Source: Macrostomum lignano
Lineage: Eukaryota
DNA: 64,000 bases
Assembly: GCA_002269645.1 (NCBI GenBank)
Contig: NIVC01000184.1
Span: 372,001 to 436,000, forward strand
Reading direction: 5' to 3'
In this document: positions 1,464 through 63,620 of the stretch, piece after piece
Layout of the letters: each line of letters opens with the position of its first letter
Position numbering within the stretch: position 1 is the first letter of the stretch
Program-made: the position numbers and the translations under genes
Notes under the pieces: model-generated
The model's input: the letters and a program-made list of their open reading frames with translations, nothing else
What the model was told of the DNA's origin: nothing
Database searches by the model: none

Positions 1464-1546
1464 CCTCCAGATGTCGAGGAGTGCAGATTGTGATGAGGAC
1501 GCACTTTTTCCCAAATTCCACGCTAGCACATGCGCTCTAAACTTGC

Positions 1547-5567: not shown

Positions 5568-6214
<647 letters not shown>

Positions 6215-9713: not shown

Positions 9714-10760
<1,047 letters not shown>

Positions 10761-11369
10761 ACAAGATCCCAGGGTGCTCCTAGTCACTAAAAGTACTGCC
10801 AATGATTGCAAAAATGCTTTATCCCGACCCCACCCAACTGCCGCGTCAATCACAGCACACGTCGGTAAACGGAACAGTCGTTATCCAAATCTTTAGACAA
10901 GCTAAACCCCACCTGATTATCGCGCCCTGTCGAACTAGAAAAAAATTCCTCTCCAAGCTGAACTCGAGATAAATTAAAAGTGCGCTCGTCTGTCGCTAGG
11001 CAGCTTTGCTCTTAGCAACAATATTCGAACTGATTGATGAGCGGGAAGCAGTGTTGGATTAAGGCGCGCCGGACCGAATCTACAAAAAATCCTGCAAGGC
11101 CTCGTATTTGCGAGTGTGAGCCTATTGCAGGGTTGGGTATACTACATGTACGCTACGATAACAAAACCAACACGCGGAATAGAGGATCAAGAGTAACTCT
11201 CGTGTGTTCCTTTTCTTAGAGGATTTCTCAAGCGCACCTGTTAATACAATGATAAATTCCGCCGCATTTTACCCGCAATAGGTTTTCCTAGAAATTATTG
11301 AGTGCAGAGGTTGGCTCCTGTTTTACAGAAGCTTCTGTTCTGTGCAGCGGACACCTTACAGGGATAGTT

Positions 11370-11977
11370 ACCTGTCCAACAGGTATAGCGACCTGTCCAA
11401 CAGGTATAGCGACCTGTCCAACAGGTATAGCGACCTGTCCAACAGGTATAGCGACCTGTCCAACAGGTATAGCGACCTGTCTAACAGGTATAGCGACCTG
11501 TCTAACAGGTATAGTGACCTGTCTAACAGGTATAGCGACCTGTCTAACAGGTATAGCGACCTGTCCAACAGGTATAGCGACCTGTCCAACAGATATAGCG
11601 ACCTGTCTAACAGGTATAGCGACCTGTCTAACAGGTATAGTGACCTGTCTAACAGGTATAGCGACCTGTCTAACAGGTATAGCGACCTGTCCAACAGGTA
11701 TAGCGACCTGTCCAACAGATATAGTGACCTATCCAACAGGTATAGCGACCTGTACAACAGGTATAGCGACCTGTCCAACAGGTATAGCGACCTGTCCAAC
11801 AGGTATAGCGACCTGTACAACAGGTATAGCGACCTGTACAACAGGTATAGCGACCTGTCCAACAGGTATAGCGACCTGTCCAACAGGTATAGCGACCTGT
11901 ACAACAGGTATAGCGACCTGTCCAACAGGTATAGCGACCTGTCCAACAGGTATAGCGACCTGTCCAACAGGTATAGC
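11370..11977. repeat. 21-bp minisatellite with internally palindromic unit
   Basis: ~29 copies of ACCTGTCCAACAGGTATAGCG; ACCTGT and ACAGGT are reverse complements. Confidence 0.97.
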
Positions 11978-15354: not shown

Positions 15355-15565
15355 CGAGCCGCACTAGCTGTTGGTCTAGCGCGGCGCTCTGGTGTGCCAG
15401 CGGCCCAGGCTCGATTCCAAGTGCAGTCACATTAATTTGGGCCAAATAGAAATCTCGGCTTGGCTCTGCTCGTGCAATCAACGCCCTTGAGGGCCAACCC
15501 CCAAGGCACAGTGAAGTGTACATGCCTAACGATGAATAAAGTTAGGGCCGCTGTACACTCTTTTA
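15355..15565 (+). mobile_element. tRNA-derived SINE, family B
   Basis: A/B-box-like head (GGCTCGATTCC); body shared with 49645-49840. Confidence 0.7.
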
Positions 15566-28392: not shown

Positions 28393-28807
28393 GCTAGCTC
28401 GCTACTCCATAGCTCCATAGCTCGCTACTAAACTGGGGGCATTTCACAAGTTCTCAAAACTTCACAATCTCTGAAAGTACCAGTAGTACTAGAAAGTTTT
28501 TTTGTTTTTTTTTATTTTTTGCTTTTTTAACTGCACTTTCTGAGTGCGAGTTTTTTTCTGCAGTAATTAACGTACCGAAAAACTTGTGCTTCTGAAATTT
28601 GGAGCTTGTGAAAGCGACCCATTAAACTAGAACGGTACTTATCGAATTCAAAGTTTTAAGAACATCGGAAATGGTTATTAAATCGTTTGATATTCGGAGA
28701 TATACGAGTATTAGGAATTTAGTGCGAAAAAACTGAAAACTTCCTTGAATTTGAAAGTGTCCGGTTAAGGTTCTGTGAACCCGCGTGAAAGCGGCACTGG
28801 AACTTAC

Positions 28808-29342
28808 CTAAAGTACACATTATTATCGCCGTAGTCTTCTTTGCGCAGCCAGCCAGACAGAGAAGCAACCCCAATAGCCCGGCCTGGCCAGTGCGTTGCC
28901 AGCACGAGAGCTCCGTGTCCGCCCATGGAGTGTCCGAGGAACACCAGTCGATCTGGGTCGGCCGCTGGCAATTCGACAGTGGCAACTTCAGCCAAAACTT
29001 CTACAGCTCGCATTGCGGTCAACGCGCCGGTCCCTCCCAGTTGTGCGCCCCGTGACGACTTGGCGCCAACAGCCAAGCGCCGGAAATTCCAAATCTATAA
29101 CCGGCGCTGGCGTCTCTACCAGCCTCTATAAACTTGTGACTATCGGCTTGATCCTCAGGCTTAATACTGGTGCCGTGTAGGCTGACTACGATTGGCAATC
29201 GAACCGCTTGCGATTTCTGACTGCGACCGGTGCCGCCCTGCCACTCTATCGGAGCAATCGCGGCAGCTCGCTGCACCGAGCCGTCGTGATCAACGAATGT
29301 GAACAGCACGCTCTGGTCTGGCCTGCGACAGCGGAGGGTCAC
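28808..29342 (-). CDS. Secreted alpha/beta-hydrolase, N-half exon 5 (nucleophile GHSMG); 1-bp frameshift at ~29027-29030
   Basis: LFTFVDHDGSVQRAA...SLHGT...QADSHK...RHGAHNWEG / GALTAMRA...GHSMGGHG...WLRKEDYGDNN; splice sites and phases fit only if one base is added in CCGG. Confidence 0.85.
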
Positions 29343-29484: not shown

Positions 29485-29735
29485 GGGGTTGTAGCCTAGT
29501 ACGTGGTTAGAGCGTCGAACTCTTGACCCGCTCGTGGCAACTTTTATCCTTGAGCAAGGCACTTAACTCTGCATTGCTTCAGTTCACCCAGCTGTAAAAT
29601 GGGTGCCAGCATTAGCTGGGGTAACTGAGGGTGCGTGTGGCGATATCCAGTTACTGCATGCACTGAATAGCCGTACGCAGCCTTCAGATGCGCCGCGCAA
29701 TAGCTGCGGCTGAGATTTCGGTTGCACATCCGCCC
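29485..29735 (+). mobile_element. tRNA-derived CORE-like SINE, family A
   Basis: tRNA-like head followed by CCTTGAGCAAGGCACTTAAC...CAGTTCACCCAGCTGTAAAATGGG (resembles MIR/CORE); homologous to 34725-35050 and 52383-52525. Confidence 0.8.
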
Positions 29736-31983: not shown

Positions 31984-32072
31984 CTGAAAAAAATTCATTT
32001 CATTTTGTGTCTCAATTAAATTGAGCAGATTCAAGTAGAAACTGGATACAGGAACGGGCTTTCTCAGAAACT

Positions 32073-32842
32073 GAGAATCTGGGAGGCTGGCCCAGCAACT
32101 GAGGATCTGGGAGGCTGGCCCAGCAACTGAGGATCTGGGAGGCTGGCCCAGCAACTGAAGTTCTGGGAGATGGTGGCCCAGCAACTGGGATCTGGGAGGC
32201 TGGCCCAGCAACTGAGGATCTGAGAGGCTGGCCCAGCAACTGAAGTTCTGGGAGATGGTGGCCTAGCAACTGGGATCTGGGAGGCTGGCCTAGCAACTAA
32301 GGATCTGGGAGGCTGGCCCAGCAACTGAGGATCTGGGAGGCTGGCCCAGCAACTGACACTCTGGGAGGCTGGCCCAACAACTGAGGATCTGGGAGGCTGG
32401 CCCAACAACTGAGGATCTGGGAGGCTGGCCCAGCAACTGAGGATCTGGGAGGCTGGCCCAGCAACTGAGGATCTGGGAGGCTGGCCCAACAACTGAGGAT
32501 CTGGGAGGCCGACCCAGCAACTGAGGATCTGGGAGGCTGGCCCAGCAACTGAGGATCTGGGAGGCTGGCCCAGCAACTGAGGATCTGGGAGGCTAGCCCA
32601 GCAACTGACACTCTGGGAGGCTGGCCCAACAACTGACACTCTGGAAGGCTGGCCCAGCAACTGAGAATCTGGGAGGTGAGCCCAGCAACTGAGGATCTGA
32701 GAGGCTGGCCCAGCAACTGACACTCTGGGAGGCTGGCCCAGCAACTGAGAATCTGGGAGGCTGGCCCAGCAACTGAGGATCTGGGAGGCTGGCCCAGCAA
32801 CTGACACTCTGGGAGGCTGGCCCAGCAACTGAGGATCTGGGG
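32073..32842. repeat. 28-bp minisatellite
   Basis: ~27 copies of GAGGATCTGGGAGGCTGGCCCAGCAACT with variants. Confidence 0.97.
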
Positions 32843-33339
32843 ATTTGAGAGAGTGAAAATTCAATTTGAGCATAGCATGACAGCCTAAAAATGAGACCTG
32901 TGCTGATATACTACTTCTAAGTACGGATGAGACGTACACTTCTGTTTTTGTAGATGAATAGCTTGTCATATCTATTACAACCAGCGTCTTAAAACGTATT
33001 TTATGACTATTAGCAAAATGTAATATCTCTGTAAAATACCTTATCAGTTTTAAAAAAAATAGCGTGAGCCAGTCCATTGGACTCAAGAAATAATTCAACA
33101 GAAATGGTAGCCATTCCTTTGTTTATTACATTTTTATTCAACAATTTGCAAGTTAAATCAATACTAAAATTATCATTAGTGACCAAAAAATGAACGTTGT
33201 GTGCGTGGGGCAAGTTAATGTTACTAAATTTTTCCAGAGTTTCTAAGAAATTAACCAACAACTTGTCTTTCTTTATAAAACGATTTGCAAAAAGAGCTTC
33301 CTTAAAGAAAAGTAAGCAAACAAGCAAACATCATAAACA

Positions 33340-34052
33340 GTCACTCAACATCATCATAAACAGTCACTCTTAACATCATAAAAAACAGTCACTCAGCATC
33401 ATCAACAGTCACTCAGCATCATCAACAGTCACTCAGCATCATTAACAGTCACTCAGCATCATCATCAACAGTCACTCAGCAATCATCAACAGTCACTCAG
33501 CATCATCATCAACAGGATCACTCAGCATCATCAACAGTCACTCAGCATCATCAACAGTCACTCAGCATCATCATCAACAGTCACTCAGCATCATCAACAG
33601 TCACTCAGCATCATCATCAACAGTCACTCAGCATCATCAACAGTCACTCAGCATCATCATCAACAGTCACTCAACATCATCATAAACAGTCACTCAACAT
33701 CATCATCAACAGTCACTCAGCATCATCAACAGTCACTCAGCATCATCATCAACAGTCACTCAACATCATCATAAACAGTCACTCAGCATCAACAACAGTC
33801 ACTCAGCATCATCATCAACAGTCACTCAACATCATCATTAACAGTCACTCTTAACATCATAAAAAACAGTAACTCAGCATCATCAACAGTCACTCAGCAT
33901 CATCATCAGTCACTCAGCATCATCATAAACAGTCAATCAACATCATCATAAACAGTCACTCAGCATCATCAACATCATCAAAAACAGTCACTCAGCATCA
34001 TCAACAGTCACTCAGCATCATCAACAGTCACTCAGCATCATCAAACAGTCAC
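33340..34052. repeat. 20/23-bp minisatellite starting at the hydrolase stop codon
   Basis: AACAGTCACTCAGCATCATC(ATC), ~30 copies; the TGA stop lies inside the terminal unit. Confidence 0.95.
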
Positions 34053-34587
34053 TGCACGCAAACGCAGGACGACAACTCGTTTCTAAATTGCCAATGGTTG
34101 TCATAGTAACCAGCGCAAGAAAACCCGCCCGGCCCGGCCGCACTAGCGGTCTCTAATCCGCCTTTGATCACTAGGTAGTCCGGCAGCCAATTGCTGAACG
34201 GCGAGCGCGCCATGGGCGGAATTGTTGGCGAGCTCAGACCAATGACTGCGTCACGTAGGCCGCGACTGTCGATGGCAAGGAACACCAGGGCGACACCGTC
34301 GGGATCCTCCAGACCAGCCGGAGCCAGGCTGACAAACGCGGATCCGGGCGTCGCTGCAACTAACGGAGCCAAAGCGCATTTCCAACGGCGCATTTGAAGC
34401 TTTTCGTCATCGATAAAATCTTGACCAGCCGAAGAATTCCAACCGCCGAGAAAGATGAAGTTTTTAATGCCGAGCGAGTTTAGCTCGCCGCGACGTTGCC
34501 AAGTTAATACGGGCGAGGGAGTGTCCGAGGTTAGCAGAAACTGATTGGCCAAGAATACGGCCAAGCTTTCCGGACAGATGGCCGGAT
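34049..34587 (-). CDS. Secreted alpha/beta-hydrolase, C-half terminal exon
   Basis: Acceptor TTCCACAG|AT (phase 1); LAVFLANQFLLTSD...PTIPPMARSPFSNWLPD...GPGG..CAGYYDNHW...stop. Confidence 0.9.
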
Positions 34588-34724: not shown

Positions 34725-35050
34725 TAATAATAATAATAATAATAATTGATTTCACCTGCTCCAATTAGGACAGATGTGCAACCGACAGCTCAGCCGCAGC
34801 TATTGCGCGGCGCATCTGAAGGCTGCGTACGGCTGTTCAGTCCAAGGACTGCGGGGTCGCCACACACACCCTCAATTACCCTCAGTTACCCCAGCTAAAG
34901 CTGGCACCCATTTTACAGCTGGGTGAACTGAAGCAATGCATAATTAAGTGTCTTACTCAAGGACACAAATTGTTTCAGTGGGATCGGGAATCGAACCCCC
35001 GACCTCCCAGTCGTGAGTCGGACGCTTTAACCACTATAGGCTACAACCCC
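34725..35050 (-). mobile_element. tRNA-derived CORE-like SINE, family A, full length with (ATT)n tail
   Basis: Head GGGGTTGTAGCCTATAGTGG (A box), GGTTCGATTCC (B box), CORE-like block, (AAT)n at 34725-34746. Confidence 0.85.
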
Positions 35051-36759: not shown

Positions 36760-37427
36760 TTTGACGGAGACTCGGAGTGAGCTGGTTCACTGCTAATGAT
36801 GAGTCAATTGACGGATCCAAAGTTGAAAATCCCCACAGTGACCAAGAAGAAGGGCAGGATGAGTTAATCGTAGGAGAACAGTGGCATCTAGTTGATGATG
36901 GCGCTGATGCCAGGCCAGCACCTCTGCCTGAGTTCCTCGGAGTACCAGGAGTCAGGCCCGATTTGCAGCTTCCTGAGATCGCCGACGGTAACGAGAGTGA
37001 TTTTATCAAGCTGCACGAGGGCTGAGCAATAAGTTTCAGATTTCAGAATCTGATTTTGTCAGATTTTGTCAGCCGCCTCTCAACTATGCACATCCGGAAA
37101 CTTATTGCTCAGCCCTCGTATTTGACGGACGGGTTGATGGAGAACATCCAGAACTGGACAAACGCAAAGGTTTGGAAGACCTATGAGGATAACTTTGACG
37201 GTGGAACAGTCCCAAATTTTGTGCTGAACTGGAAGGACTGCATGGTTAATGAAGTAAGAAAATTGATCGGAATTGTTTTGCTGATTGGACTGGACAAGAA
37301 GCCTGAAATATCGAGCTATTGGTCGCAAGATCCGTCTTATCACTGTGCATTTCTTGCTGAGCCTTGTTCTCTTCCTAGAGACAGGTTCAAGCAGCTGATT
37401 TCGTCTGCATTGCCCTCCAATGGTTAG
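36760..37427 (+). mobile_element. piggyBac (PGBD4-like) transposase N-terminal fragment, degenerate, intronic
   Basis: PEFLGVPG...DFIKL; TDGLMENIQNWTN; WKDCMVNEVRKLIGIVLLIGLDKKPEISSYWSQDP...LPRDRFKQL; frameshifted, TIRs not found. Confidence 0.8.
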
Positions 37428-44690: not shown

Positions 44691-47080
44691 TGACCGGCCA
44701 GGCTCAGGACGGCCCGGACGAGGCGGTCACTATATACGCCGTGCAGGGAGACGGTGAGATCCGTGCGCAGCTGCGGCTCGGACAAGCAGAGGTGCCGGTC
44801 AATACTCTGATCGACTGCGGCGCCAAGGTGTCACTGTTGAACGCCGACACGGCCGCGCTCCTGACCGACGTGCTACCTCAGCCGACAACGATGAAGCTGC
44901 GCGCATACGGCGGCAAGCTGATCGATCTCGTGGGCCAAGCGGTGGTTCCCGTTAAGCACAACAATTCCGCTCGCTGCAACACCTATTCTACATCGCGAAG
45001 CACGGCGACAACATCGCAGGTCGAGACCTCATGGATAAGCTTGGTTTCCATGTGAGCCTCTCCGAGGACGTCAGCGAGGTGAACAGCGTCGCGGAGCAGC
45101 TAGAGGCGCGGTTCCCAGCGGCCTTTAGCGAGCAGATCGGCTGCTGCAGCGGAGCCGTGCACAAGCCCGTCATCGACCCCTCCGTGCCGCCAGTGCGCCA
45201 GCCTGTGCGTCGTCTACCGCTGGCCAAGCAGCAGCTGGTGGAGGCTGAGCTCGACAAACTGGAGGCGGCTGGCATCATCGAGCGAGTCGACTCGAGTCGC
45301 TGGGTGTCAAACCTGGTGACCACCACCAAAAAGGACGGCAGCATCAGGGTCTGCGTCGATATCCGGGAGCCCAACAAGGCGGGGATATGCGATCAACACC
45401 CGATGCCCCAGCTGGACGACATCGCTGCCAAGATCAAGGGGGCCAAAGGACAGATCTTCAGCAAGGTGGACCTGAAGGCCGGCTACATGCAGATAGAGCT
45501 GCACGAGTCTTCGCGCGACCTGACAGCCTTCATCACGCACAAGGGCCTATACAGGTACTGCCGAGTGCCGTTCGGTTTGACGTCAGCGCCTGCGGCGTTC
45601 CAGCGCATGCTCGACGATCTGGTGGCCGACCTGGACGGCGTGGAGCACATCCTCGACAATTTCATCATCTTCGATGCCACCACGACGGAGCACGACCGCT
45701 GTTTGGAGGCTCTACTGCGGCGACTCAGTGACAGGGGCTTGACAGTGAACAAGCAGAAATGCGAGTTCCGACGGCCGCAGATCGAATTCTTCGGCTTCCT
45801 AGTTTCCGGCGACGGGTTCCGTGTTGGCGATTCGCGTACGCGTGCTTTCGAAGAGATCCGGGCTCCAACCTCCCAGAAGGAGCTGCAGTCGTTCCTGGGC
45901 GCCGCCAACTTCCTCAGGCGTTTCATCCCACACTTCTCGGACACCACGGAGCCGCTGCGCAAGCTGCTTAAGGCCGACGCGGAGTTCAGCTGGTCCGAAG
46001 AGTGCCAGCATTCTTTCGACGCGCTGAAGCAGGCGGTCAGCAGCCCGCCAGTTCTGGCTTTGTTCGACCCGCAGCCGTCACGATTGTCACTACGGACGCC
46101 AGCTCAGTCGCCCTGGGCGCCCAGCTGTCCCAGCTGCAGGACGGCGTCGAGCGGCCGATCGCCTTTGCCGCCCGAGCGCTCACAGAGACCGAGCGGCGCT
46201 ACGCAGCCAACGAACGAGAAGCCCTGGCGTGTCTCTGGGCCATGGAAAAGTGGCACTTTGAGCTCAGAACGGATCATCAGTCTCTGCGGCAGCTGCTGAT
46301 GGGACCCAGCGGCACCGGGCACCGGCCGCTCCGCATCCACAGGTGGTGCGATAGGTTCCAACAGTATGATTTCCACGTCCGCTATCTACCCGGCATGGCC
46401 GACCTCCTGTCCCGGTGGAGCAACGGCTTCGACATGAACTTCGTCCAGCTGCCCGACACCGCGATGCCCAGGGTGCCTGCGTTGTCACTGTCCGAGCTGG
46501 CGGAGGCGACGACCAAGGACGAGACGCTGCGACGGGTGCGGCAACACGTGCTAAACGGTGACTGGCCCAGGCGCACAGCAGACCCCGAGCTCAAGCCGTA
46601 CCTGCTGGCGCGACAACACCTAAGCGTCTGGCACGACGCTTCCTGCCTGGCGTTTCAGGAGCGAGCCGTCATTCCGGCGGAGCTGAGGCGCGGCGTCTTG
46701 GAACAGGCGCACACCGGACACCCAGGCGTGGTGCGCACAAAACAGATCCTGCGAGAGTCCGTTTGGTGGCCGCGACTCGACGCTGACGTCGAAACCTTCA
46801 TCAGGGGCTGCGGCGCGTGTGAGACGGCGCAGAAGAACTTCAAGCTGCACCCAGCGCCGCTGCAGCCGATCGAGTGGCCCGCGGGTCCGTGGGAGGAGAT
46901 CGCCGTCGACATCGTCGGTGAACTGCACGAAACGCCGCAATCGTCCCGGTTCCTGCTGGTGGCTACGGACCTGCATAGCAAGTGGCCGGAGGTCTTCGCC
47001 ACGGCTAGCGTCACAACCGAAACCGTCTGCAAGGTGATGTGGTCCCTGTTCGCTCGCTGGGGTCTCTGCAAGAAGGTCAT
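44690..47080 (+). pseudogene. pol: pol (protease-RT-RNase H-integrase), frameshifted and truncated
   Basis: LIDCGA protease; KVDLKAGYMQI, PFGLTSAP and ILDNFII RT motifs; TDASSVALGAQL; HTGHPG...CGAC zinc finger; IAVDIVG integrase cut off at WGLCKKV; frame changes at ~44980 and ~46075. Confidence 0.92.
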
Positions 47081-47284
47081 AAATTTATTCGTATATTGTA
47101 TTGTGAAACGTATTTTTAATCGCGTGACATTTTGGCGGTTGAATTTATCGATCGTGCAACAATTTACTGTTAAATATCAAATATAAGCGCGGGTTGCCCT
47201 AAGTGGAGCTCGCACTTTTTTCCGGCAAAAAGTCTTACCTGCCACGTACTCGTGTTTCCTGTGTTAGTCTGTTGAGACACCACA
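47080..47284 (+). repeat. 3' LTR, 5'-truncated by deletion
   Basis: Directly abuts the truncated integrase; no PPT or first ~95 bp of the LTR. Confidence 0.88.
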
Positions 47285-47725: not shown

Positions 47726-49355
47726 AAACCGATAAAAATAACTGTCAGATTTAACCTTCTCACTGAATCACTTCACACTTCATATTGAATTGGAGTAATC
47801 AGACTACTAACAGTATTATTAAGTGATTTCTGCCTCAATAAAAGCGCTACTGAAAAAATGAGCAAAAGTGTGCACCTAATCCAGCTACTGCAATAGGGGA
47901 CAGATAAGGAATCACCCAATCAAGCAAGTCTAGGTAGCCTCTCACCCAACCAATCAGAAACTCAACAGCCGGAGACCAGGTAATCCCAGTGACCGAATCA
48001 GCTTAGTGCTTCGCAGCTGTAGGCCCGGGATGATGCTGATGTCACAATCTTCGCTGATAGCTAGCAGGTGATGATCTTTAACCTTGATGTTCGCTGCTGA
48101 CGACCGGGGGGATTCGTCCTTGATGATGACGGGGGAGTCGCGATCCGGGGATCAAGAGACGACGGTCGCATGTAGCAGCCGGGTGTCAGGTGACAGGTGA
48201 CCGGCCAAGTTTTAGTCTGAGCGGGCCAGAAACGCCGGTTTTTATAGCCGCCAACTGGACCGCAATTTGTTATAATGAAAAACCTCGACGCTGATTGGCT
48301 GAGCCGATTTGTTATAACTGACATGGAATTTTCTGATTGGCTGAGCTTGTTGCCACCCAAACTCACGTGACCAGAAGATCCTATCAGTTCCCTCGGGGCC
48401 AAAAAAATACACCAGGTGCAGTCATAAATCACTCACAATCGCTACACAATGATTTATGACCTTTCGCGAAGGAATGATAAAAGATAATGAAAAAATATAC
48501 ATTAGAAAGATCTTATTAAGTAGAAAGTGAAGATAATGAAGAGAAATCGCTAATCGCTAATCCCAACGTACTTTTAGGGGTAAAACGCATAGCTGTCAGA
48601 GCTGTCACACGCTTGAGTAAACACGAACAATAGGCCCTGACCTCATAAATCTGATGGCCTGTCAAAAATTATGAGAAAAAAGCTACCGCCCGCATCCCCT
48701 CAGACCATCTGCATGGCGCCAGCCTCAGCATTGAGTGAGGCGCAGGTGGCTGTCAGACCAGCTCAAAAGCGATGATTTATGACCCCAAAAGTAGCGAAAA
48801 CCGCGCCTATGTTATTATAACTACAAGTATGGCAAAATTATATAGCTACAAAAGTTCTACTAGTGTGAAGTCTAGCAACACAACAACAACAAGTTACGCC
48901 CCAGGGTCGATGTTGGGCGTCACAGGTCGCGCCTCAGAGCACGGGAGCGGAGAAAGGCCGGTCCACCGGCCTGGTCGGGGGCGCCAGCATCGGCCAGCAG
49001 GCAGTCCGGATACCGCCGAGTGCGCGCCTGCCCCCGCCGGAAAGGCGCCGGGAGCGCAAGCAGCAGCGTTTCCTGCGCCGGCTCGGGGCAGTACGCCTCA
49101 GCGCGGATGAGGTGGCCTGCCAGCTGGAGCCGCCGGCGGCGGAGCAGATCGCTGGGCGGGCCAGGCGAGCTCGGGCGTACAGCGCCACGTTGGTGACATG
49201 CTCGCCGCCGCTGATCTTGAAGGCAGCGAAGGCATGAATTCTAGGAAAATTACATAAAAAGGAGAAAAATGCCCATAGCCTGCTGTTAGTAGGCTAACTA
49301 GTAAGTTTGGAGCCCATGTGCGCGCGTGAAATTTGGAAAAAAAGTGCGTCCTCAT
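47726..49355. mobile_element. Second copy of the long-TIR foldback element (left TIR missing)
   Basis: 47726-48230 matches core 2225-2755 and 48240-49296 matches the right TIR; interrupted by a LINE fragment. Confidence 0.88.
48868..49236 (-). mobile_element. 5'-truncated RTE-like LINE 3' fragment with (TTG)n tail
   Basis: Minus strand encodes LRRRRLQLAGHLIRAE...RRGQARTRRYPDCLLAD; tail TTGTTGTTGTTG; flanked by TGAAGTCTAG/TGAATTCTAG (TSD-like); absent from copy 1. Confidence 0.8.
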
Positions 49356-49644
49356 CACTCTTCCAAATTTTAAATGTAAAAGTTAGCCAACAACTACTGT
49401 ACTTTGTGAGACGATTTCGTACTTTGATGTTGGCGCCTTTTTGAAACTGGATCGAGCCCCCCGATATGTCACATTGAGGTGGTACCTCGATCGATCTGGT
49501 CACGTTGCTCCGTGCTGGCGCCCCCATTAAGACATATTATCTAGCTCCCACCCTGATCTTCCGACTGACATTTACAAAAAATTAACAACCATCATGCTTG
49601 AACTGTATAGTATAAACACCTTTATATGCATTATTATGTCGAGG

Positions 49645-49840
49645 GGGAGTCGTAGCCTACTAGTGGTCTAGCGCGGCACTAGTTCTTATGATTCCAAGTG
49701 CAGTCACATTAATTTGGGGCTAAATTGGAACCTCGGCTTGGCTCTGCTCGTGCAATTGACGCCCTTTGAGGGCCAACCCCTTAGGTACACTGAAGTATAC
49801 ATGCCTAATGATAAAAAAGGTTAGGGCCGCTGTACACTCG
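49645..49840 (+). mobile_element. tRNA-derived SINE, family B
   Basis: Homologous to 15355-15565, with a deletion in the tRNA head. Confidence 0.7.
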
Positions 49841-49904: not shown

Positions 49905-50225
49905 GGAGATCGACGTCGATGGACGTCGGGAACGTCGGCCAGACGTCGCCAACGTCGGATCGCTGTAATAGCTGACTGCTTTGCCCAAGTACAGCTGTCA
50001 GTCAACAAGTCAAGTGTCACGATCGTAATGTCAATGTTGAACAAGGGTCTACGAGCTACGACGTTTGCCAGAGGGACGTTTGCAAGCGGCAACTTGTTAA
50101 AGAATTGTGCCCTCTCTAGGCGTACATGTACTTGCATTTGAAAACTAAAACTGCAACTGCATACTGCAAACGTCGGCTGGCAAACGTCGGCTGGCAAACG
50201 TCGGCTGGAAAACGTCGATATCCCG
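49905..50225. repeat. Cluster of (A)ACGTCGG subterminal-type repeats (possible EnSpm/CACTA-like non-autonomous element)
   Basis: GACGTCG/AACGTCGG repeated ~10 times, including (AAACGTCGGCTGGC)x3; a similar ACGTC-rich patch lies at 495-665. Confidence 0.4.
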
Positions 50226-51080
50226 TTGAACCAACAACAGGATATATAATGTTCAACATTTGTTAAAATTTTGTTTGTTCAACATTGACATAGTCATCTT
50301 GACACCTTAAATAACTCTATTAAGGGCTGTTCATGGTACATAGCCTAATGATGTCTACAATAATTCAGATTCTTCTTTTGCAAAAAGCATTTGACTGTTG
50401 TTTTATCACTTAGCTAACTATACCGCTAGTATATAGTTCAGCACGTATGCGAACTATTCTGCTCCTTACATACATAATTTGGGTAGCCTAAAGCCAATTT
50501 TAAAATGACTACAGCTAGACTCATGATTATTACTGCGCCCATGGAACGGGCATTTGAAATGTCTCGAAACTTCTTCCTGTTATTGGAAAGGAGAGCTCAA
50601 ACAGGGAGGGGTGGAATCGCGCGCTTCTTTAGAGAAGGTTGTATAGCTACTCTGATCGAACCCACTGCATTGTTTGCCTGGAAGCGCATGGAGTGGGTTG
50701 TTCGTCTCCACGCCCCTCCACCTTCCCAACTCCTTATACTGTGCATTGATACTCGCGATTCTGCTGGTACCACACCTCCGCGCCATGGTGCAGTGGGCAG
50801 TCACGGGGAATTTCCCAAAATGGTCCATAGCTATAGACTGCAGTTCCTGAATGCATGGACGAAGTAACTTTGGTAGTGTCGAAGTCCATGCATGCAGGAA
50901 GGAGGTGGAGTGGTATGGCTGAGTCTCTCTGGTCGATAGCAGCTGGTTTTTTGACTTAGGAATAATCGAAACCATTTTAAGAACCTGCAGGCTCGCCCGC
51001 AAAGCTCCCGGCTAATTCACTTCAGTTTAACTCTCCTGGTTTCTAGTGGAATATCTTAACCTAACTAAATCTTAGCAGTG

Positions 51081-51129
51081 ATGAAGCTCATCTTTCTACT
51101 AGCTATCGTGGCCGTTGCAGCCATCTGCC
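51081..51129 (+). CDS. Secreted lysine-rich protein, exon 1 (signal peptide)
   Basis: MKLIFLLAIVAVAAIC, donor C|GTAAGT, phase 1. Confidence 0.88.
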
Positions 51130-51233
51130 GTAAGTAAAATTCTATGATGATCCATGTAGTTTGCGCGTTCTACGACGCATCTCACCAAGCATTTAGTTAA
51201 GTCAAAACTTTTCTAATCTAATCTGTCTTTTAG

Positions 51234-51644
51234 TCGGCGAATCGGCTCCAACTAGAAACAACATGCTTGCAATGGCGACAAGCAAGAAAGCCGGCAAGAA
51301 GGGGGATGCAAAAACTAAAAAGATTGCCAAGGAGGTCGCCACGAAGGTCGCCACGAAGGTCGCCACGAAGGTCGCCACGAAGGTCGCCAAGAAGGTCGCC
51401 AAGAAGGAATCCAAGAAGGTCGCCAAGAAGGTCGCCAAGAAGGAATCCAAGAAAGCCGCCAAGAAGGGCGGAAAGAAAGGCGCCAAGAAAGGAAAGAAGG
51501 CCAAGAAGGGAAAGAAGGCCAAGAAAGGAAAGAAGGCCAAGAAAGGAAAGAAGGCCAAGAAAGGAAAAAAGGGCAAGAAGGGAAAAAAGGGCAAGAAGGG
51601 CGGCAAGAAAGGCGGTAAAACTGCTCCTGGATGGGATTTTGATT
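51234..51644 (+). CDS. Secreted lysine-rich protein, exon 2 (VATK/VAKK/AKKGKK repeats)
   Basis: Acceptor TCTTTTAG|TC in frame (L-GESAPTRNN...); donor GAT T|GTGAGT. Confidence 0.88.
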
Positions 51645-51725
51645 GTGAGTACTCTCTGCTGAAACATGTCCCATGAGTAAATTAGCAACCACTATAGTAC
51701 ATCAGCAAAAACCTTCAAATTTTAG

Positions 51726-51730
51726 ATTAA
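51726..51730 (+). CDS. Secreted lysine-rich protein, probable micro terminal exon (Y-stop)
   Basis: Acceptor AAATTTTAG|ATTAA gives ...WDFDY-stop (154 aa); unspliced read-through to 51676 is the alternative. Confidence 0.55.
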
Positions 51731-52382
51731 GCCCGACAACATTCAAGCGACATCAACTCAATCTTGCCTATCAACCGTGGCCTAGAAGAAAAGCATGCAG
51801 TTTACATTATGCCGAAAATTCTGAAAGGAACCATTGGGAACCTTTTTTAAAAGTATCAAGTACGACACTCATATTGGACGCTTATATTTAAATTAATAGG
51901 TGAAAATTTCTTTCTATGTGGTGTTCAGTTCCTCGTTTGATAGGTAGGGATTCAATACTTGTTGAAATGATGATTTTTACATAAAATTTAATTAAAGTCA
52001 ATAAATTTAACAAAAATAAATGAAATTGGTTTTAAGAAGTTATAAAATTAGGATTGGGACCTTGGAAGCTTTAAAATCTCTAGATTGTTTGTAAACAATT
52101 TTTCGTTAAATTTGTTTAATTATTTTTAAATCCGAAAAATATCATGTTTGTTCTTTGCTTATAAGTACAGCAGTTTAAAGCTCTAATGATCCTATAAGCA
52201 GGCCGTCTTATTTATTTAACATTTTCACTGTACATTCTTTCCTTACTACTCAATAGTACGCAAGGAAGGAATCAAAATAAAAACTCGATTTTCCTCATGA
52301 AAATTGTACAAGCGTAAGCTATGTGCACTTCTGGATTCTATATTTTCTCTATGAAATTTCTCTATCAACTTCTCCTATGTGA

Positions 52383-52525
52383 AGCACCCATTTTACAGCT
52401 TGGGTGAGCTGAAGAAATGCAGAGGTAGGTGTCTTCCTCAAGGACACAAATTGTTCCAAGCGGGTCGAGAATCGAACCCCCGACCTTTTAGTCGTGAGTT
52501 CGACGCTCAACTACTAGACTATATT
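52383..52525 (-). mobile_element. CORE-like SINE family A, partial
   Basis: tRNA head plus CORE-like block homologous to 34890-35050. Confidence 0.7.
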
Positions 52526-53299: not shown

Positions 53300-53385
53300 G
53301 AGAAAACGACGCGCCCGCCTCCAGTCCGGGTTGCTGTATCACAAACACCCGGCTTCTTCTGGAGGGAGCAGTCCATCGCCAACTT
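53300..53385 (-). pseudogene. Relic fragment of the PAN/C-type lectin family
   Basis: Encodes RRSRVFVIQQPGLEAGAS versus RRGRVFVKQQPGLEAGAL in the intact paralogue. Confidence 0.7.
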
Positions 53386-54612: not shown

Positions 54613-55359
54613 TCAGTTAAATGGCGACACGCACTCGCACAGGGCATTCAAGGCGTAATTTTCCGGAACATCGACCAGGTTTTTTACGTTCGGTACGCGA
54701 GCTACAAAACTTTCACTTCCGCCACCGTTATTGGGATCAGGTTTGCACCACAGGCTGCCGTCAATGGGGATGTTGCAGCCGACCCAGTGCCAGCCTCCGG
54801 CGGGTTCAGCGCTGCCGGCTTGCTGCAACCCTCCGAGATAGAAGGCCTCTCCTGAGCTGCGCAAATCGTGAATCTCGTCTACGTGGCTCATCTCGGTAGC
54901 GTCCACCACATCCGCCATGATCACCAGACCGCTCTCCGACTCGCACTTCTGTCTGCTCTCTGACCAGATTCTAGTGGTGTTGTACACCTTGTACTTCACT
55001 CCGCACAGGTCGTCTCCGTAGCCAGACGGACACAGCGCGCCCGCCTCGAGTCCCGGCTGCTGCTTCACAAACACCCGGCCTCTCCTGGAGCAGCCGCAGT
55101 CCCTCACCGACTTGCTGCACTTGTCGAACACGAACAGCTGGCACGGACCGTCAGCCAGGCTGAACGCCTGACAGCGCCGGTTTCGGTTGCACAGAGTGGC
55201 GCACCCGATCTCAGAGTGCGAGCCACCTAGAGTCTCAATAAAGTCGCTCCTGATGCACAGGTAGCCGGTGATCAGGTTGTAGGCGTCCTGCATCGCAGCT
55301 GGAGCTTGCAGAGACAGCAGAGCCAAAATGACTTTTGATTGGAGTCCGAGTGCTTTCAT
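54613..55359 (-). CDS. Secreted PAN/apple + C-type lectin domain protein (intact, intronless, 248 aa)
   Basis: Signal peptide; CATLCNRNRRCQAFSL...CQLF apple motif; WSESRQKCE, FYLGG, GWHWV, LVDV and ALCE C-type lectin motifs. Confidence 0.92.
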   Translation of the reverse strand: MKALGLQSKVILALLSLQAPAAMQDAYNLITGYLCIRSDFIETLGGSHSEIGCATLCNRNRRCQAFSLADGPCQLFVFDKCSKSVRDCGCSRRGRVFVKQQPGLEAGALCPSGYGDDLCGVKYKVYNTTRIWSESRQKCESESGLVIMADVVDATEMSHVDEIHDLRSSGEAFYLGGLQQAGSAEPAGGWHWVGCNIPIDGSLWCKPDPNNGGGSESFVARVPNVKNLVDVPENYALNALCECVSPFN

Positions 55360-57289: not shown

Positions 57290-58020
57290 TCAGTTGAATA
57301 GCGACACGCACTCGCAGAGGACATTCCTGGGGTAGCTATCAGGAACATCGACGAGTTTGTTCATTCCCGGAAAATAAGCCACGACGTTTTCCAAGCCGCC
57401 ACCGTTGGGCTCTACAGCCGCCCACAGGCTGTCGTCAATGGGGATGTTGCAGCCAACCCAGTGCCAGCCTCCGGGGGGTTCAGCGCTGCCGGCTGGCTGA
57501 AACCCTCCGAGGTAGAAAGGCGCTTCAGGACTGCGCACACCATGAATCTCGTCTACGTGGCTCATCTCGGTAGCGTCCACCACATCCGCCATGATCACCA
57601 GACCGCTCTCCGACTCGCACTTCTGTCTGCTCTCTGACCAGATTCTAGTGGTGTTGTACACCTTGTACTTCACTCCGCACAGGTCGTCTCCGTAGCCAGA
57701 CGGACACAGCGCGCCCGCCTCGAGTCCCGGCTGCTGCTTCAAAAACACCCGGCCTCTCCTGGAGCAGCCACAGTCCCTCACCGACTTGCTGCACTTGTCG
57801 AACACGAACAGCTGGCACGGACCGTCAGCCAGGCTGAACGCCTGACAGCGCCGGTTTCGGTTGCACAGAGCGGCGCACCCGATCTCAGAGTGCGAGCCAC
57901 CTGGAGTCTCAATGAATTAAAGTCGCTCCTGATGCACAGGTAGCCGGTGATCAGGTTGTAGGCGTCTTGCATCGCAGCTGGAGCTTGCAGAGACAGCAGA
58001 ACCAAAAGGAGCGTCATCAT
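57290..58020 (-). pseudogene. PAN/apple + C-type lectin paralogue with 5-bp insertion frameshift at ~57914
   Basis: Near-identical to the 5' part of 54613-55359; CAATGAATTAAAGTCG versus CAATAAAGTCG; EPN motif in the lectin domain. Confidence 0.85.
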
Positions 58021-60914: not shown

Positions 60915-63507
60915 TATATATTATATATATATTAAGACGCAGAGGGGAGGCCCCTTGCGCGCACGCGTTCGCAGAACAGGCGGGAGGGGCAGGCAGCAGC
61001 AGCCTGAGGGGTCAGCTCAAGCGCCTGCAAGTCAGCGATGAGGCAGTTCATTAGGGTGGCAGTGCGAGCCTGGCCACGGCGCAATTGTTCGGTCGGCCGG
61101 TGCAGCATGGCCAGGGCCAGAGGGACGGGCGCGCCGCGACCCAGGGTCCGTAGGCAGTGGCCCAGCAGCATCTGGCGGCGCCGGCGCAGTATGGCACTCA
61201 GGGGCGGAGTTCCGGCGCGGGCCATCAGAGCGTTGGTCGGCAGGCGATCCGGATAGTGCACGCCCAGCGCGTAGCGCAGCAGCGATCGGTAAAGCGCGTC
61301 TAGGGCTCGCTCTCGCGTTTCGGTCAGCGGCACAGCCTCCATGCCGTACAGAAGAATCGGCTCGACGGCCGTGCGAAACAGGCGCACCTTCAGGTCGTCT
61401 CTGGCAGCTGAATTAAAAACGTTCCTGAGGAGGTGAGCGGCGCGCCAGGCCTGATTCCTCCTGTCGGAGACAATCGCATCGGGGCTCATCACCAGGGCGC
61501 CGAGGTACCGGAAGTCCTCGCACACCGCGATGCGATCTCCATTGGGCAGCGTTAGAGTTGGGGCGGTATTCGTGCCCACGTGCAGCGCCTCCGTCTTGCG
61601 AGCATTCACCAGCAGCCCAACACGGGCGCCCTCGTCGCACAGCCTTGTGAGAGCGCGCTGGGCCGCAGCTGGGTCGCGGCAGAGCAGCGCGATGTCGTCA
61701 GCATACGCGAGAGCGGGAAGCGAAACATCAGGGTGTCTGGAGCTTCGGCGTGGGACCAGCAAGTAGCTGTCATCCTCGCGGAGGGACCGACGAAGCACGT
61801 AGTCCACAACCACGAGGAAGAGCAGAGGAGCCAGCGTGTCACCCTGAAGAACGCCTGAGCTGGTGCCGAACTCTTCTGTGGGGCCGTCGCTCGACATGAC
61901 AAAAGCCCTGGAGTCGCGGTAGAGGTCCATCACCGCACTCACCAGCGCAGCAGGCACGCCATATTGCGATAGAAGCCACCGATCGCAGGCCTGGACACCG
62001 AGTCAAACGCCTTGCGAAAGTCGACGAAGATGATTGACACGGAGCGCTGGCGGGTCTTGCAGGCCTCGATGACAGAGCGGATGGTGGCAACCTGCTCGGT
62101 GGTGGACCTACCCGGGCGGAAGCCGCTTTGGAGGCTCAGCAGCAGCGGGTTGAGGCCGGGCAGCAGGCGGTTGCGCAGAATTGCGTTCAGCAGCTTCGGC
62201 GTTGTGCATTCCAGTGCGATGCCCCGCTGGTTGTCCAGGCTGGTGGAGGCGCCTTTCTTCGGGATGGAGACGATCTTGGAGGTGCGCCATTGCTGAGGAG
62301 CTGAGGCGGTCTCGTTGCCTCCAAGGCTGCAGTGTTTGTTCAGCAGGCTGGTGATGGTTGGGGTGAGTTCGGGCAGCTTCAGGACCCTGGGAGGGATGGC
62401 GTCCACCCCAGCGGCGGCATCAGCTCGCATGGTCCTCAGTGCTCGGTCAACCTCGCCTGCAGTGATGGGGCCGGTGTTGAAGGCGCTCGGCTGGGCTGGA
62501 GTGAAGTCCGGGATTGGCAGAAGAGGCGCAGTTGGAGCGGGCGCGTTGAGCACCTCGCGGTAGTGGGCGGCCAGTAGAGCCTTGCGGTGCTCGGTGGAAT
62601 CGGCGCCGACGATGGTGCTGGGCCTGGGTTTCCTGCCTGTCAGCTGGTTGATGGCCCTCCAGGCAGCGCTATGGCGGCAGTTGTCAGTGGCGAGTTGGAT
62701 TTCGCTCACAACCTCTTCGATGAAGGCTTCAGTCCGTTGGGCGTAGATGCGCTGCAGCTCGTCCCTGGCAGCACTGGACTGGTCGCTGTCATGGCCGTGG
62801 AGTGCAGCAGTGCTCTGCACATGCCGCCTTGCCTGGGAGATGACGGGATCGCGGTCCCACAGTGTCTTTGGATGGTTTGCCTGTCTCCGTGGGAGAAGCG
62901 CTGCAGCATCCTCAACAGCGTGATGGAAAGACTCGAAGGACTCGGCTGGAGCAGGAGTGGCGGCAAGCAGCTTGCGAAGGAAGGCCTGCCGCGTGTCCGG
63001 GTTTCTCAGGTCGGCCCAGAGCGGGTGAGGTGGCGCAGGCCGGAGCTTTTGCCAGTGCAGGTCGAAGTCGCATGCCACCAGGCGGTGATCAGATTGAACG
63101 CAGTCGGGGCGGATATTGAGGACTCTGCGCACCCTGGACCTCAGACCAATTGGGCAGAGAATCCAGTCCAGCCGAGTGGTTCGCCCGTTGGGACCAGAGA
63201 AAGTTGGGAGCTTGCTGAAGCGCTGTTGCAAGGTGCCGTTGACAGTTATCAGATCTCTGGCCTGGATAAAACTAGATAGAAAAGGAGAGTTGGCATTGGG
63301 GGTGCCACAGCTGTTCTTTACCAAGCGGCCGTCAGCTGGCAGTGGCGAGTTGAAGTCACCAGCGACAATGACAGAATCACGAGCAGGGAGGGAATCAAGC
63401 GTGCAGCCCAGGGTGTCGTAAAGGGCTTCTGTCTCAGATGGATCTTCGCTGGTCCGAGGGGCCGTTGGGGCATAGACGCAGATGACTTGCAGATGAATTG
63501 CAGACGC
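60915..63507 (-). mobile_element. RTE-like LINE, 5'-truncated (APE endonuclease + RT), in NUDT18 intron 1
   Basis: VYAPT, GDFN and SDH endonuclease motifs; FVDFRKAFDSV, QGDTLAP and YADD RT motifs; (TA)n tail right after the stop; 10-bp TSD AATTTACATA (60905-14, 63508-17); one frameshift at ~61975. Confidence 0.95.
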
Positions 63508-63620
63508 AATTTACATAGCTACCTTGTATTTCAAGCATACTACATTTGTTAAACAATTACTGCTAAAAATTTTAAGAAAATTATACTGTAATTTAACGAG
63601 TGTCACATTTTCACGGTCAG

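What the first reader, a model, noticed from the sequence alone, without database searches (positions are those of the whole stretch)
51081..51730. Small secreted ultra-cationic protein with a graded lysine repeat architecture
Seen: the ORF track shows only a histone-H1-like K-rich ORF, but an upstream 49-nt exon supplies a classical signal peptide (MKLIFLLAIVAVAAICLGES/APT). The mature chain has about 57 Lys in ~134 residues and only ~6 acidic residues. It runs VATK x4, then VAKK/ESKK, then (AKKGKK)n and (GKK)n, ending in an aromatic/acidic tip WDFDY. There is no winged-helix globular domain, so it is not a linker histone. Inference: a candidate antimicrobial, adhesive/cement, rhabdite/mucus or seminal protein. 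K-rich secreted proteins are known in flatworm adhesion (Mlig-ap1), but this short architecture does not resemble a family I recognise.
Basis: partly seen in the sequence, partly recalled or inferred. Interest (0 to 1): 0.7.

Follow-up and report, generated by a model that had tools for sequence, protein, structure and literature searches.

The report
Small secreted polylysine-like flatworm protein
A compact three-exon gene in a Macrostomum-like flatworm genome most likely encodes a 154-residue secreted protein that is 43% lysine (net charge about +52) and has no detectable relatives. It is probably a gland-secreted polycation that binds negatively charged sugars or surfaces, but its expression and function could not be tested here.

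Summary
Exons 51081-51129, 51234-51644 and 51726-51730 (+) join through GTAAGT/TTTTAG and GTGAGT/TTTTAG into a 465-nt CDS. It encodes a 20-residue signal-peptide-like leader and a 134-residue chain with 57 Lys and 6 acidic residues (14.1 kDa, net charge about +52). The chain runs VATKx4, then VAKK/ESKK, then (AKKGKK)n, then (GKK)n, and ends in WDFDY. Chance is unlikely. The leader ranks 3rd of 751 ATG-started peptides in the window. The only two GT[AG]AGT hexamers within about 1.3 kb sit at the two proposed donors. GC3 in the Lys frame (0.69) matches a neighbouring gene (0.71). No winged-helix or any Pfam domain was found, and there was no PDB match. No credible homologue appeared among 1.84 billion representative proteins, in the word-indexed searches or in the metagenome scans. 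Low complexity weakens these negatives. Neighbouring PAN/C-type-lectin genes place the window in a Macrostomum-like flatworm. The best reading is a taxon-restricted, disordered secreted polycation that acts by electrostatic binding to polyanions. Its closest functional analogues are the Lys/Arg-rich regions of flatworm adhesive proteins ap1 and ap3. No transcript, expression or functional evidence is available. Interest is moderate.

The parts
51081..51129 (+). Exon 1: start codon plus 16.3 codons, MKLIFLLAIVAVAAIC(L). This is the n- and h-regions of a signal peptide and ends in phase 1.
   Evidence: It is the only non-microsatellite peptide of 1668 ATGs to pass the signal-peptide filter and ranks 3rd of 751. 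There is an in-frame TAA 15 nt upstream.
51130..51233 (+). Intron 1, 104 nt, GTAAGT...CTGTCTTTTAG, phase 1. It lies just before the predicted cleavage site.
51234..51644 (+). Exon 2: the end of the signal peptide (LGES), a non-repetitive N-terminal stretch (APTRNNMLAMATSKKAGKKGDAKTKKIAKE), the Lys-repeat body and TAPGWDFD.
   Evidence: GC3 is 0.69 in this frame against 0.41-0.43 in the others.
51326..51489 (+). 12-nt tandem array (GCCAAGAAGGTC x13.7) encoding VATKx4, VAKK, ESKK, AAKK and GGKK tetrapeptides (25-50% Lys).
   Evidence: (84% matches). The hydrophobic moment peaks at 90 degrees per residue.
51482..51615 (+). 18-nt (2 x 9-nt) tandem array encoding (AKKGKK)n, then (GKK)n and GGKK (67% Lys).
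   Evidence: (94% matches for 51482-51597; 12-nt tail 51590-51615). The periodicity peaks at 120 degrees.
51645..51725 (+). Predicted intron 2, 81 nt, GTGAGT...AAATTTTAG, phase 1. It has less support than intron 1.
   Evidence: No better downstream acceptor or exon was found up to 54600.
51726..51730 (+). Coding start of exon 3: it completes Tyr154 and gives the TAA stop.
51991..52020 (+). Cluster of poly(A) signals (ATTAAA at 51991, AATAAA at 52000 and 52015). This is the likely 3' end, giving a 3' UTR of about 270-300 nt.
   Evidence: Sequence.

Best explanation
This is a real, lineage-restricted, three-exon gene of a Macrostomum-like flatworm. It encodes a small secreted protein that is in effect a tethered polylysine.

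Mechanism (inferred): the signal peptide directs the chain into the secretory pathway of a gland cell. The mature 14-kDa chain carries a net charge of about +52 and has no fold of its own. It has a moderately charged V/A/T/K block that could form an amphipathic helix, a 67%-Lys block, and a short aromatic/acidic cap (GWDFDY). It works by multivalent electrostatic binding to polyanions. Candidate partners are sulphated or acidic glycans of mucus, rhabdites or glue, negatively charged substrata, and cell-surface glycocalyx. It would condense or bridge these partners and become helical only when its charge is neutralised.

The most likely setting is a glue, cement or mucus secretion. There it would act like a miniature stand-alone version of the Lys/Arg-rich cohesive regions of flatworm adhesive proteins.

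Shown here: the gene anatomy, the composition, the absence of any domain and the absence of any homologue. Inferred: secretion, disorder, the polyanion partner and the tissue.
For: Gene model: canonical splice sites and an in-frame leader. The leader is exceptional for the window. The only two GT[AG]AGT hexamers in the 1.3 kb around the gene are at the two donors. GC3 is 0.69 in the Lys frame against 0.71 in a neighbouring gene. The repeat periods are 12 and 18 nt. Differences between units are largely AAG/AAA and GGA/GGC third-position changes. Poly(A) signals follow. The locus is unique in the window and is not part of a transposon.

Physical character: 57 of 134 residues are Lys, pI is 10.9 and net charge is +52. 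AlphaFold gives a single helix over residues 23-125 with pLDDT 75 and pTM 0.31, so there is no tertiary fold. There is no Pfam domain.

Biological precedent in the same animals: Mlig-ap1 carries secreted Lys/Arg-rich regions that bind negatively charged sugars. Heparin blocks attachment, and free cationic peptide or lysine blocks detachment (PMC6410801). Other flatworms have stand-alone secreted Gly/Arg/Lys proteins, called ap3 (PMC9229212). Planarian rhabdites are built on sulphated glycosaminoglycans (PMC5450325). The neighbouring genes are secreted PAN/C-type lectins.
Against: There is no transcript, proteomic or expression evidence. Secretion rests on a rule-based reading of 20 residues. 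No orthologue was found, so there is no conservation evidence that the frame, the leader or the WDFDY tip is under selection. The repeat units are nearly identical, so the array is young and could belong to a recently born or neutrally evolving ORF. Known flatworm cohesive proteins are Arg-rich and more than 3000 aa long. This protein has one Arg and 154 aa. The tissue and the partner are unknown. AlphaFold's helix for a chain of +52 charge is not physically credible in isolation.
Confidence: 0.42

Rival explanations
1. Host-defence polycation. The protein, or fragments cut from it at its many Lys-Lys sites, is secreted into mucus or the gut and kills or clumps microbes by binding their anionic envelopes.
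For: It has a signal peptide and extreme positive charge. The VATK/VAKK block has a hydrophobic moment of 0.36-0.51 at 100 degrees in 18-residue windows and is predicted helical. It lies next to a tandem cluster of secreted PAN/C-type lectins, a gene type often used in innate recognition. From general knowledge, histone-H1-derived and polylysine-type polycations are antimicrobial.
Against: At 134 aa and +52 it is far outside the usual 12-50 aa and +2 to +9 of linear antimicrobial peptides. Over the whole 41-residue block the amphipathic signal is at 90 degrees, not 100 (0.64 against 0.01), so the hydrophobic stripe winds around a long helix. There is no acidic pro-region. No homologue exists among known antimicrobial peptide families. 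Adjacency to lectins does not show co-expression.
Confidence: 0.15
2. Seminal-fluid or other reproductive secretion (prostate, cement-gland or antrum product). The protein would be transferred with sperm or laid on eggs, where it binds sperm, partner tissue or eggshell. It could also serve as a Lys donor for quinone or oxidase cross-linking.
For: Macrostomum has many prostate-limited transcripts, most with predicted secretion signals (38 of 65 by SignalP; PMC5977470). The repeats look fast-evolving and no homologue is detectable, which fits reproductive proteins. Lys-rich substrates suit tyrosinase-type cross-linking, which has been proposed for flatworm secretions (PMC9229212).
Against: Nothing in the sequence is specific to reproduction. 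The Lys motifs of this protein were not found in the held supplementary files of the prostate screen, though those files may not carry protein sequences. There is no Tyr- or Gln-rich partner region.
Confidence: 0.1
3. Non-secreted nuclear basic protein (H1-tail-like or a sperm nuclear basic protein). It would be translated from the internal ATG at 51263, and the leader exon would be fortuitous.
For: The unspliced ORF 51263-51676 exists. Its composition (K, A, G) recalls H1 C-terminal tails. The internal ATG has a purine at -3.
Against: The leader and donor are improbable by chance. There is no winged-helix domain in the protein or in 2.6 kb upstream in any + frame. No H1, protamine or sperm nuclear basic protein hit appeared in 1.84 billion representatives or in the PDB. 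It has only 2 Pro and 1 Arg, unlike H1 tails or protamines.
Confidence: 0.07
4. No functional protein. A purine-rich coding-like minisatellite carries a fortuitous or very young ORF, which is either untranscribed or transcribed without function.
For: All six frames are open over the array. The window is full of tandem arrays that give long ORFs, for example the 21-mer array at 11358-11977, which is open in three frames. The units are 84-94% identical, so the array is young. No homologue exists anywhere.
Against: Several features coincide: an exceptional signal-peptide exon, two consensus donors at exactly the needed places, in-frame non-repetitive N- and C-terminal flanks, periods that are multiples of three, GC3 typical of the host's genes in one frame only, and downstream poly(A) signals.
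Confidence: 0.15

Closest known systems
Lys/Arg-rich (KR or 'GRK') regions of the flatworm cohesive adhesive protein Mlig-ap1, and the stand-alone GRK proteins ap3 of Minona ileanae and Theama mediterranea (PMC6410801, PMC8621496, PMC9229212)
   Same: They come from the same group of animals. They carry a signal peptide. They are low-complexity tandem repeats dominated by Gly and basic residues, with extreme positive charge. They have no homologues outside flatworms. Their demonstrated or proposed action is binding of negatively charged glycans or lysine-binding Kringle domains.
   Different: Those regions are over 3,000 aa long and rich in Arg (plus His and Ser in Tmed-ap3), and in Macrostomum they flank a lectin/vWD/EGF core. 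This protein has 154 aa, one Arg and no His. It uses V/A/T/K and A/G/K units, has a graded design and ends in an aromatic/acidic tip. No sequence homology was detected, and its expression is unknown.
C-terminal domain of linker histone H1 (and H1-like sperm nuclear basic proteins)
   Same: About 40% Lys with Ala/Gly spacers. Intrinsically disordered, becoming helical on binding a polyanion (general knowledge). The first-stage ORF track looked 'H1-like'.
   Different: It has no winged-helix globular domain. It has an N-terminal signal peptide. It is almost free of Pro. It gave no hit to H1 families.
Polybasic Lys/Gly-rich cement proteins of the sandcastle worm (the Pc family), which coacervate with polyphosphoserine partners (general knowledge; reviewed in works cited in PMC6262867)
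   Same: Small secreted, repetitive Lys/Gly-rich polycations whose job is electrostatic pairing with a polyanion inside secretory granules and in the glue.
   Different: They come from a different phylum. Those proteins are Tyr/DOPA-rich, and this one has a single Tyr. No polyanionic partner is known here. Homology was not tested directly, and none surfaced in the global searches.
Linear cationic alpha-helical antimicrobial peptides and polylysine-type polycations
   Same: Secreted and cationic, with a V/A/K block that is locally amphipathic.
   Different: This protein is 3-10 times longer and 5-25 times more charged. It has no pro-region, and its 67%-Lys tail is not amphipathic (moment about 0 at 100 degrees).
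Planarian PROG-1 family of lysine-rich proteins of differentiating epidermis (PMC5750089)
   Same: Flatworm-specific proteins described as lysine-rich and linked to epidermal differentiation.
   Different: PROG-1 proteins are 10-19% Lys, with the Lys scattered, and have conserved Cys and Asp positions (PMC5750089). This protein is 43% Lys in tandem repeats and has no Cys in the mature chain.

Membership tests
Linker histone H1/H5 (Pfam PF00538) | Central winged-helix globular domain | tested here: not met
   There is no Pfam hit for the 154-aa protein. No Linker_histone hit appears in any + frame of 48500 to about 52600 at E<=1. AlphaFold shows one helix and no globular fold. No H1 appears among PDB hits.
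Linker histone H1/H5 (Pfam PF00538) | Nuclear protein without a secretory leader | tested here: not met
   An N-terminal signal-peptide-like leader is supplied by a spliced exon. This is a rule-based call, not a SignalP result.
Sperm nuclear basic proteins / protamine-like | Arg-rich or H1-related sequence with detectable similarity to known members | tested here: not met
   The mature chain has 1 Arg. No such hit appeared in 1.84 billion representatives, Pfam or the PDB. Low complexity limits sensitivity.
Flatworm cohesive GRK/KR proteins (Mlig-ap1 flanks, ap3) | Signal peptide plus a low-complexity region dominated by Gly, Arg and Lys | tested here: inconclusive
   The leader is present, and Gly plus Lys make up 56% of the mature chain, but Arg is 1 of 134 and Ala/Val/Thr are prominent. 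The family description comes from PMC6410801 and PMC9229212.
Flatworm cohesive GRK/KR proteins (Mlig-ap1 flanks, ap3) | Very large size (KR regions over 3,600 aa in Mlig-ap1; Tmed-ap3 is 3,700 aa) | tested here: not met
   The protein has 154 aa. The stop is reached with or without intron 2, and no convincing downstream exon exists.
Flatworm cohesive GRK/KR proteins (Mlig-ap1 flanks, ap3) | Expression in adhesive gland cells and presence in footprints | not testable with these tools
   No expression data are available for this genome.
Linear cationic alpha-helical antimicrobial peptides | Short mature peptide (about 12-50 aa) with moderate charge and a continuous amphipathic helix | tested here: not met
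   The mature chain is 134 aa with net charge +52. Over the 41-residue block the moment is 0.64 at 90 degrees and 0.01 at 100 degrees. The tail is about 0 at 100 degrees. Processing into shorter peptides is not excluded.
Planarian PROG-1 lysine-rich family | Scattered Lys (10-19%) with conserved Cys and Asp positions | tested here: not met
   This protein is 42.5% Lys in tandem repeats and the mature chain has 0 Cys. The family features come from PMC5750089. No direct alignment was run.
Collagen-like (Gly-X-Y)n | Long uninterrupted run with Gly at every third residue | tested here: not met
   Only about 4-5 consecutive GKK triplets occur. In the AKKGKK units Ala replaces every second Gly. PDB hits to collagen-like peptides have E of 0.8-6.

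The most novel reading that the evidence does not exclude
The protein is a previously unseen small soluble component of the macrostomid duo-gland or mucus system: a diffusible mini polycation. It would either pre-condense the polyanionic glycan cargo in secretory granules or tune attachment and release by competing with the large Lys/Arg-rich cohesive protein for anionic partners. This would tie in with the finding that added cationic peptides block detachment in M. lignano (PMC6410801). It would also be a natural, genetically encoded 'graded block polyelectrolyte' with an amphipathic block, a polylysine block and an aromatic/acidic cap.
Probability: 0.15. Interest if true: 0.65.

Novelty: new variant of a known kind. 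Interest (0 to 1): 0.4.

Why it matters
If it is expressed and secreted, this would be one of the most highly charged small secreted proteins described: 43% Lys and a charge of +52 on 14 kDa. It occurs in a group of animals whose reversible glue is already known to depend on Lys/Arg-rich protein and anionic glycan chemistry.

A 134-residue natural polycation with a built-in charge gradient can be synthesised and expressed, unlike the adhesive proteins of several thousand residues. It could therefore serve as a handle for testing charge-based attachment/release and granule-packing models, and as a template for biomimetic polyelectrolytes.

If instead it proves to be a young, unexpressed ORF on a minisatellite, it is an ordinary by-product of a repeat-rich genome.

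Tried and rejected

2. Exhaustive phmmer of the exon-2 protein against 1.84 billion representatives: 4 hits, all repeat-against-repeat artefacts (AEEIAEPV, MATEMATN and PAPKVV repeats, and a Gly/Arg/Pro-rich collagen-like sequence).

3. The N-terminal 98 aa searched at E<=10: six tiny metagenomic ORFs with (ATKV)n-like runs and no shared leader or termini, rejected as chance.

4. Metagenome scans with back-translated peptides and with the KTAPGWDFD motif: nothing.

5. Exact-sequence contig look-ups of the unspliced ORF, the neighbouring lectin and its best hit: not on record.

6. Pfam on the protein and on three-frame translations around it: nothing, apart from a spurious Yae1_N hit in an alternative frame of the repeat.

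7. PDB sequence search: only compositional hits. No structure-library search was run, because a single low-pTM helix would give meaningless matches.

8. Rfam and tRNA scans of the window: empty.

9. Paralogues in the window: none.

10. Literature searches for the repeat motifs as text strings, and of the supplements of the prostate screen: no occurrences.

11. Considered and rejected: part of a transposon (the locus is unique and has no TE domain); an exon of a larger gene (in-frame stop 15 nt upstream of the ATG, and no credible downstream exon); a minus-strand Leu/Phe-rich ORF (no start, splice or leader evidence); a single-alpha-helix (E/K) domain (only 3 Glu).

Full report
WHAT IS THERE. 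An ATG at 51081 has an in-frame TAA 15 nt upstream. It opens a 49-nt exon encoding MKLIFLLAIVAVAAIC plus one base, and the exon ends at a consensus donor, GTAAGT. After 104 nt, an acceptor (CTGTCTTTTAG) joins a 411-nt exon. That exon completes the leader (LGES) and continues with a 30-residue non-repetitive stretch, the Lys repeats and TAPGWDFD. A second consensus donor (GTGAGT) and an acceptor 81 nt later (AAATTTTAG) add Tyr and TAA.

The CDS is 465 nt and encodes 154 aa. After removal of a 20-residue leader, the chain has 134 residues: 57 K, 22 A, 18 G, 8 T, 8 V, 3 D, 3 E, 1 R and no Cys. It weighs 14.1 kDa, has pI 10.9 and carries a net charge of about +52. Tandem Repeats Finder reports a 12-nt unit x13.7 (51326-51489) and an 18-nt unit x6.4 (51482-51597). 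At the protein level these give VATKx4, then VAKK, ESKK, AAKK and GGKK, then (AKKGKK)n, then (GKK)n. Lys density rises from 25% to 50% to 67%.

IS IT MORE THAN CHANCE? An ORF over a tandem repeat proves nothing in this window. All six frames are open across the array. Unrelated arrays, such as the 21-mer x29.5 at 11358-11977, also give ORFs of over 200 aa in three frames. Independent features matter more.
- Of 1668 ATGs on both strands, the one at 51081 is the only non-microsatellite start whose first 16 residues pass a strict signal-peptide filter.
- On a looser score it ranks 3rd of 751. The leader of the neighbouring lectin also ranks high, which serves as a positive control.
- GT[AG]AGT occurs 23 times on the + strand of the whole window. 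Between 50900 and 52200 it occurs only twice, at exactly the two proposed donors.
- GC3 is 0.69 in the Lys frame and 0.41-0.43 in the other two frames. The adjacent lectin ORF has 0.71, and the window overall is 46% GC.
- Differences between repeat units are largely AAG/AAA and GGA/GGC, which are third positions in the Lys frame.
- Both repeat periods are multiples of three.
- ATTAAA and AATAAA signals follow at 51991-52020.

A phase-1 intron just before a signal-peptide cleavage site is also a common arrangement in animal secreted-protein genes (general knowledge). I put the chance that this is a genuine coding gene in the Lys frame with a secretory leader at about 0.75. Intron 2 is the weaker call. 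Without it the protein ends WDFDCEYSLLKHVP. No credible alternative downstream exon exists before the minus-strand lectin fragment at 53.3 kb.

WHERE IT SITS. The window is eukaryotic and rich in repeats. It holds satellites and microsatellites, pol pieces of a gypsy-type retrotransposon at about 45-47.2 kb, RT ORFs at 60.9-63.5 kb and a piggyBac-like fragment. No RNA genes were found. The stretch 50000-52380 is unique within the window and is flanked by dispersed repeats. The gene has no paralogue in the window.

Downstream and convergent lie two tandem genes for secreted PAN plus C-type-lectin-like proteins. One is intact at 54616-55359. The other, at 57293-57987, is 84% identical but shifts frame near 57917. 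There is also a fragment at 53310-53363. The intact lectin's best database hits are Macrostomum lignano 'C-type lectin domain-containing' proteins at 57% identity. No exact copy is on record. The source is therefore a macrostomid flatworm. It is probably not the annotated M. lignano proteome itself, though an unannotated paralogue cannot be excluded.

WHAT IT IS NOT. It is not a linker histone or a sperm nuclear basic protein.
- Pfam finds nothing in the protein.
- Pfam finds nothing in any + frame from 2.6 kb upstream to 1 kb downstream at E<=1, apart from a spurious hit in an alternative frame of the repeat.
- The PDB sequence search gives only compositional matches, with no H1.
- AlphaFold2 on the single sequence gives one continuous helix (residues 23-125 of exon 2) with mean pLDDT 75 and pTM 0.31. 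That is no globular fold, and the helix is not physically credible for a free chain of +52 charge.
- It is not collagen-like, because Gly-X-Y is interrupted.
- It is not a PROG-1-type planarian lysine-rich protein. Those have 10-19% scattered Lys and conserved Cys and Asp positions (PMC5750089).

RELATIVES. None were found.
- The word-indexed search of 5.8 billion proteins gave nothing at E<=1e-3.
- An exhaustive phmmer against 1.84 billion representatives gave four repeat-against-repeat artefacts.
- The N-terminal 98 residues at E<=10 gave six short metagenomic ORFs that share only (ATKV)n-like runs.
- Two metagenome scans were empty.

These negatives are weak evidence of absence. Composition correction suppresses Lys-rich matches. 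The source genome itself is evidently not in the collections. The informative non-repetitive parts are too short to reach significance in libraries of this size.

HOW IT PROBABLY WORKS. The architecture is leader, short neutral linker, V/A/T/K block, A/G/K block and GWDFDY cap.
- The tetrapeptide block has its hydrophobic moment at 90 degrees per residue (0.64). In 18-residue windows it reaches 0.36-0.51 at 100 degrees, so it is locally amphipathic if helical.
- The tripeptide block peaks at 120 degrees and is simply a polycation.
- With 43% Lys and no Cys, the chain should be disordered in solution. It should bind polyanions multivalently and gain helix on charge neutralisation, as H1 tails do (general knowledge).

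Flatworm biology offers clear anionic partners and precedents.
- In M. lignano the cohesive adhesive protein Mlig-ap1 carries over 3,600 residues of Lys/Arg-rich repeats. Heparin-like sugars block attachment. Free lysine, arginine or a cationic peptide block release (PMC6410801).
- In Minona and Theama the Gly/Arg/Lys repeats form a separate secreted protein, ap3, which is proposed to dock onto a Kringle-domain protein (PMC9229212, PMC8621496).
- Planarian rhabdites are scaffolded by sulphated glycosaminoglycans (PMC5450325).

I therefore favour a gland-secreted polycation that condenses or bridges anionic glycans or surfaces in glue, cement or mucus (confidence about 0.4). The rivals, with my confidence in each, are:
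- an antimicrobial polycation (0.15);
- a reproductive secretion (0.1);
- a non-secreted nuclear basic protein (0.07);
- a young non-functional ORF on a minisatellite (0.15).

Nothing computed here separates the first three. Only expression data and bench tests will.

NOVELTY AND SCORE. Secreted low-complexity polycations are a known kind in flatworms and in other adhesive or defensive systems. This one differs in several ways. It is about 20 times shorter than the flatworm cohesive proteins. It uses Lys only, with a single Arg. It has a graded two-period repeat design and an aromatic/acidic tip. It has no detectable homologue. I class it as a new variant of a known kind. Interest is moderate (0.4). 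The charge density is striking and the protein is experimentally tractable. However, orphan repeat-encoded secreted proteins are common in such genomes, and there is no evidence yet that this one is expressed.

Noticed in passing
window 53310-53363, 54616-55359, 57293-57987 (all - strand): A tandem cluster of secreted PAN/apple plus C-type-lectin-like genes. One copy is an intact 248-aa ORF. A second copy is 84% identical but changes frame near 57917, from either a frameshift or an assembly error. There is also a short third fragment. The best hits are Macrostomum lignano proteins at 57% identity, which identifies the window as a macrostomid flatworm.
   Followed up: partly
window about 44956-47183 (+): pol region of a gypsy-type LTR retrotransposon (RVT_1, RNase H, integrase zinc-binding and core domains), split over at least two overlapping frames and so probably degraded. 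It was not reconstructed.
   Followed up: no
window 60935-63510 (-): Two adjacent ORFs (356 and 523 codons stop-to-stop) that each match part of a reverse-transcriptase domain. This is probably a broken non-LTR or other retroelement.
   Followed up: no
window 37026-37424 (+) and 7622-8041 (-): A fragment of a piggyBac-like DDE transposase (E 3e-9), and a weak, sub-threshold match to a tyrosine-recombinase (phage-integrase) domain.
   Followed up: partly
window 28807-29094 (-): An isolated exon-like ORF with an esterase/lipase nucleophile-elbow motif (GHSMGG) and a Pfam 'Esterase' hit (E 2e-6). It is probably one exon of a host gene, and neighbouring exons were not mapped.
   Followed up: no
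window 18378-26593; 5568-6204; 9715-10763; 11358-11977; 32065-32841; 33329-34053: Very heavy tandem-repeat load: an 8.2-kb satellite of a 35-mer (x237), (AGAC)159, (CAGA)263, a 21-mer x29.5 that is open in three frames, and 28-mer and 20-23-mer arrays. These served here as a control showing that ORFs over repeats are not evidence of genes.
   Followed up: partly
window 50844-50900: A near-perfect palindrome (17-nt arms, 94% complementary, 23-nt spacer) about 180-240 nt upstream of the start codon of the Lys-rich gene. It might be a promoter-proximal element or a repeat relic.
   Followed up: no
window 48000-49360, 49690-49839, 52384-52516: Dispersed repeat copies flank the gene. They are 80-91% identical to 1490-3430, 15413-15560, 29521-29606 and 34904-35036. 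The gene therefore sits in a unique island of about 2.4 kb between interspersed repeats.
   Followed up: no
window 51267-51662 (+, frame +1 relative to the Lys frame): The same repeat read one base later gives an open Arg/Pro/Ser-rich frame (SPRR repeats) that superficially resembles protamine or SPKK-type motifs. GC3 (0.43) and the splice frame argue that it is not the coding frame.
   Followed up: yes
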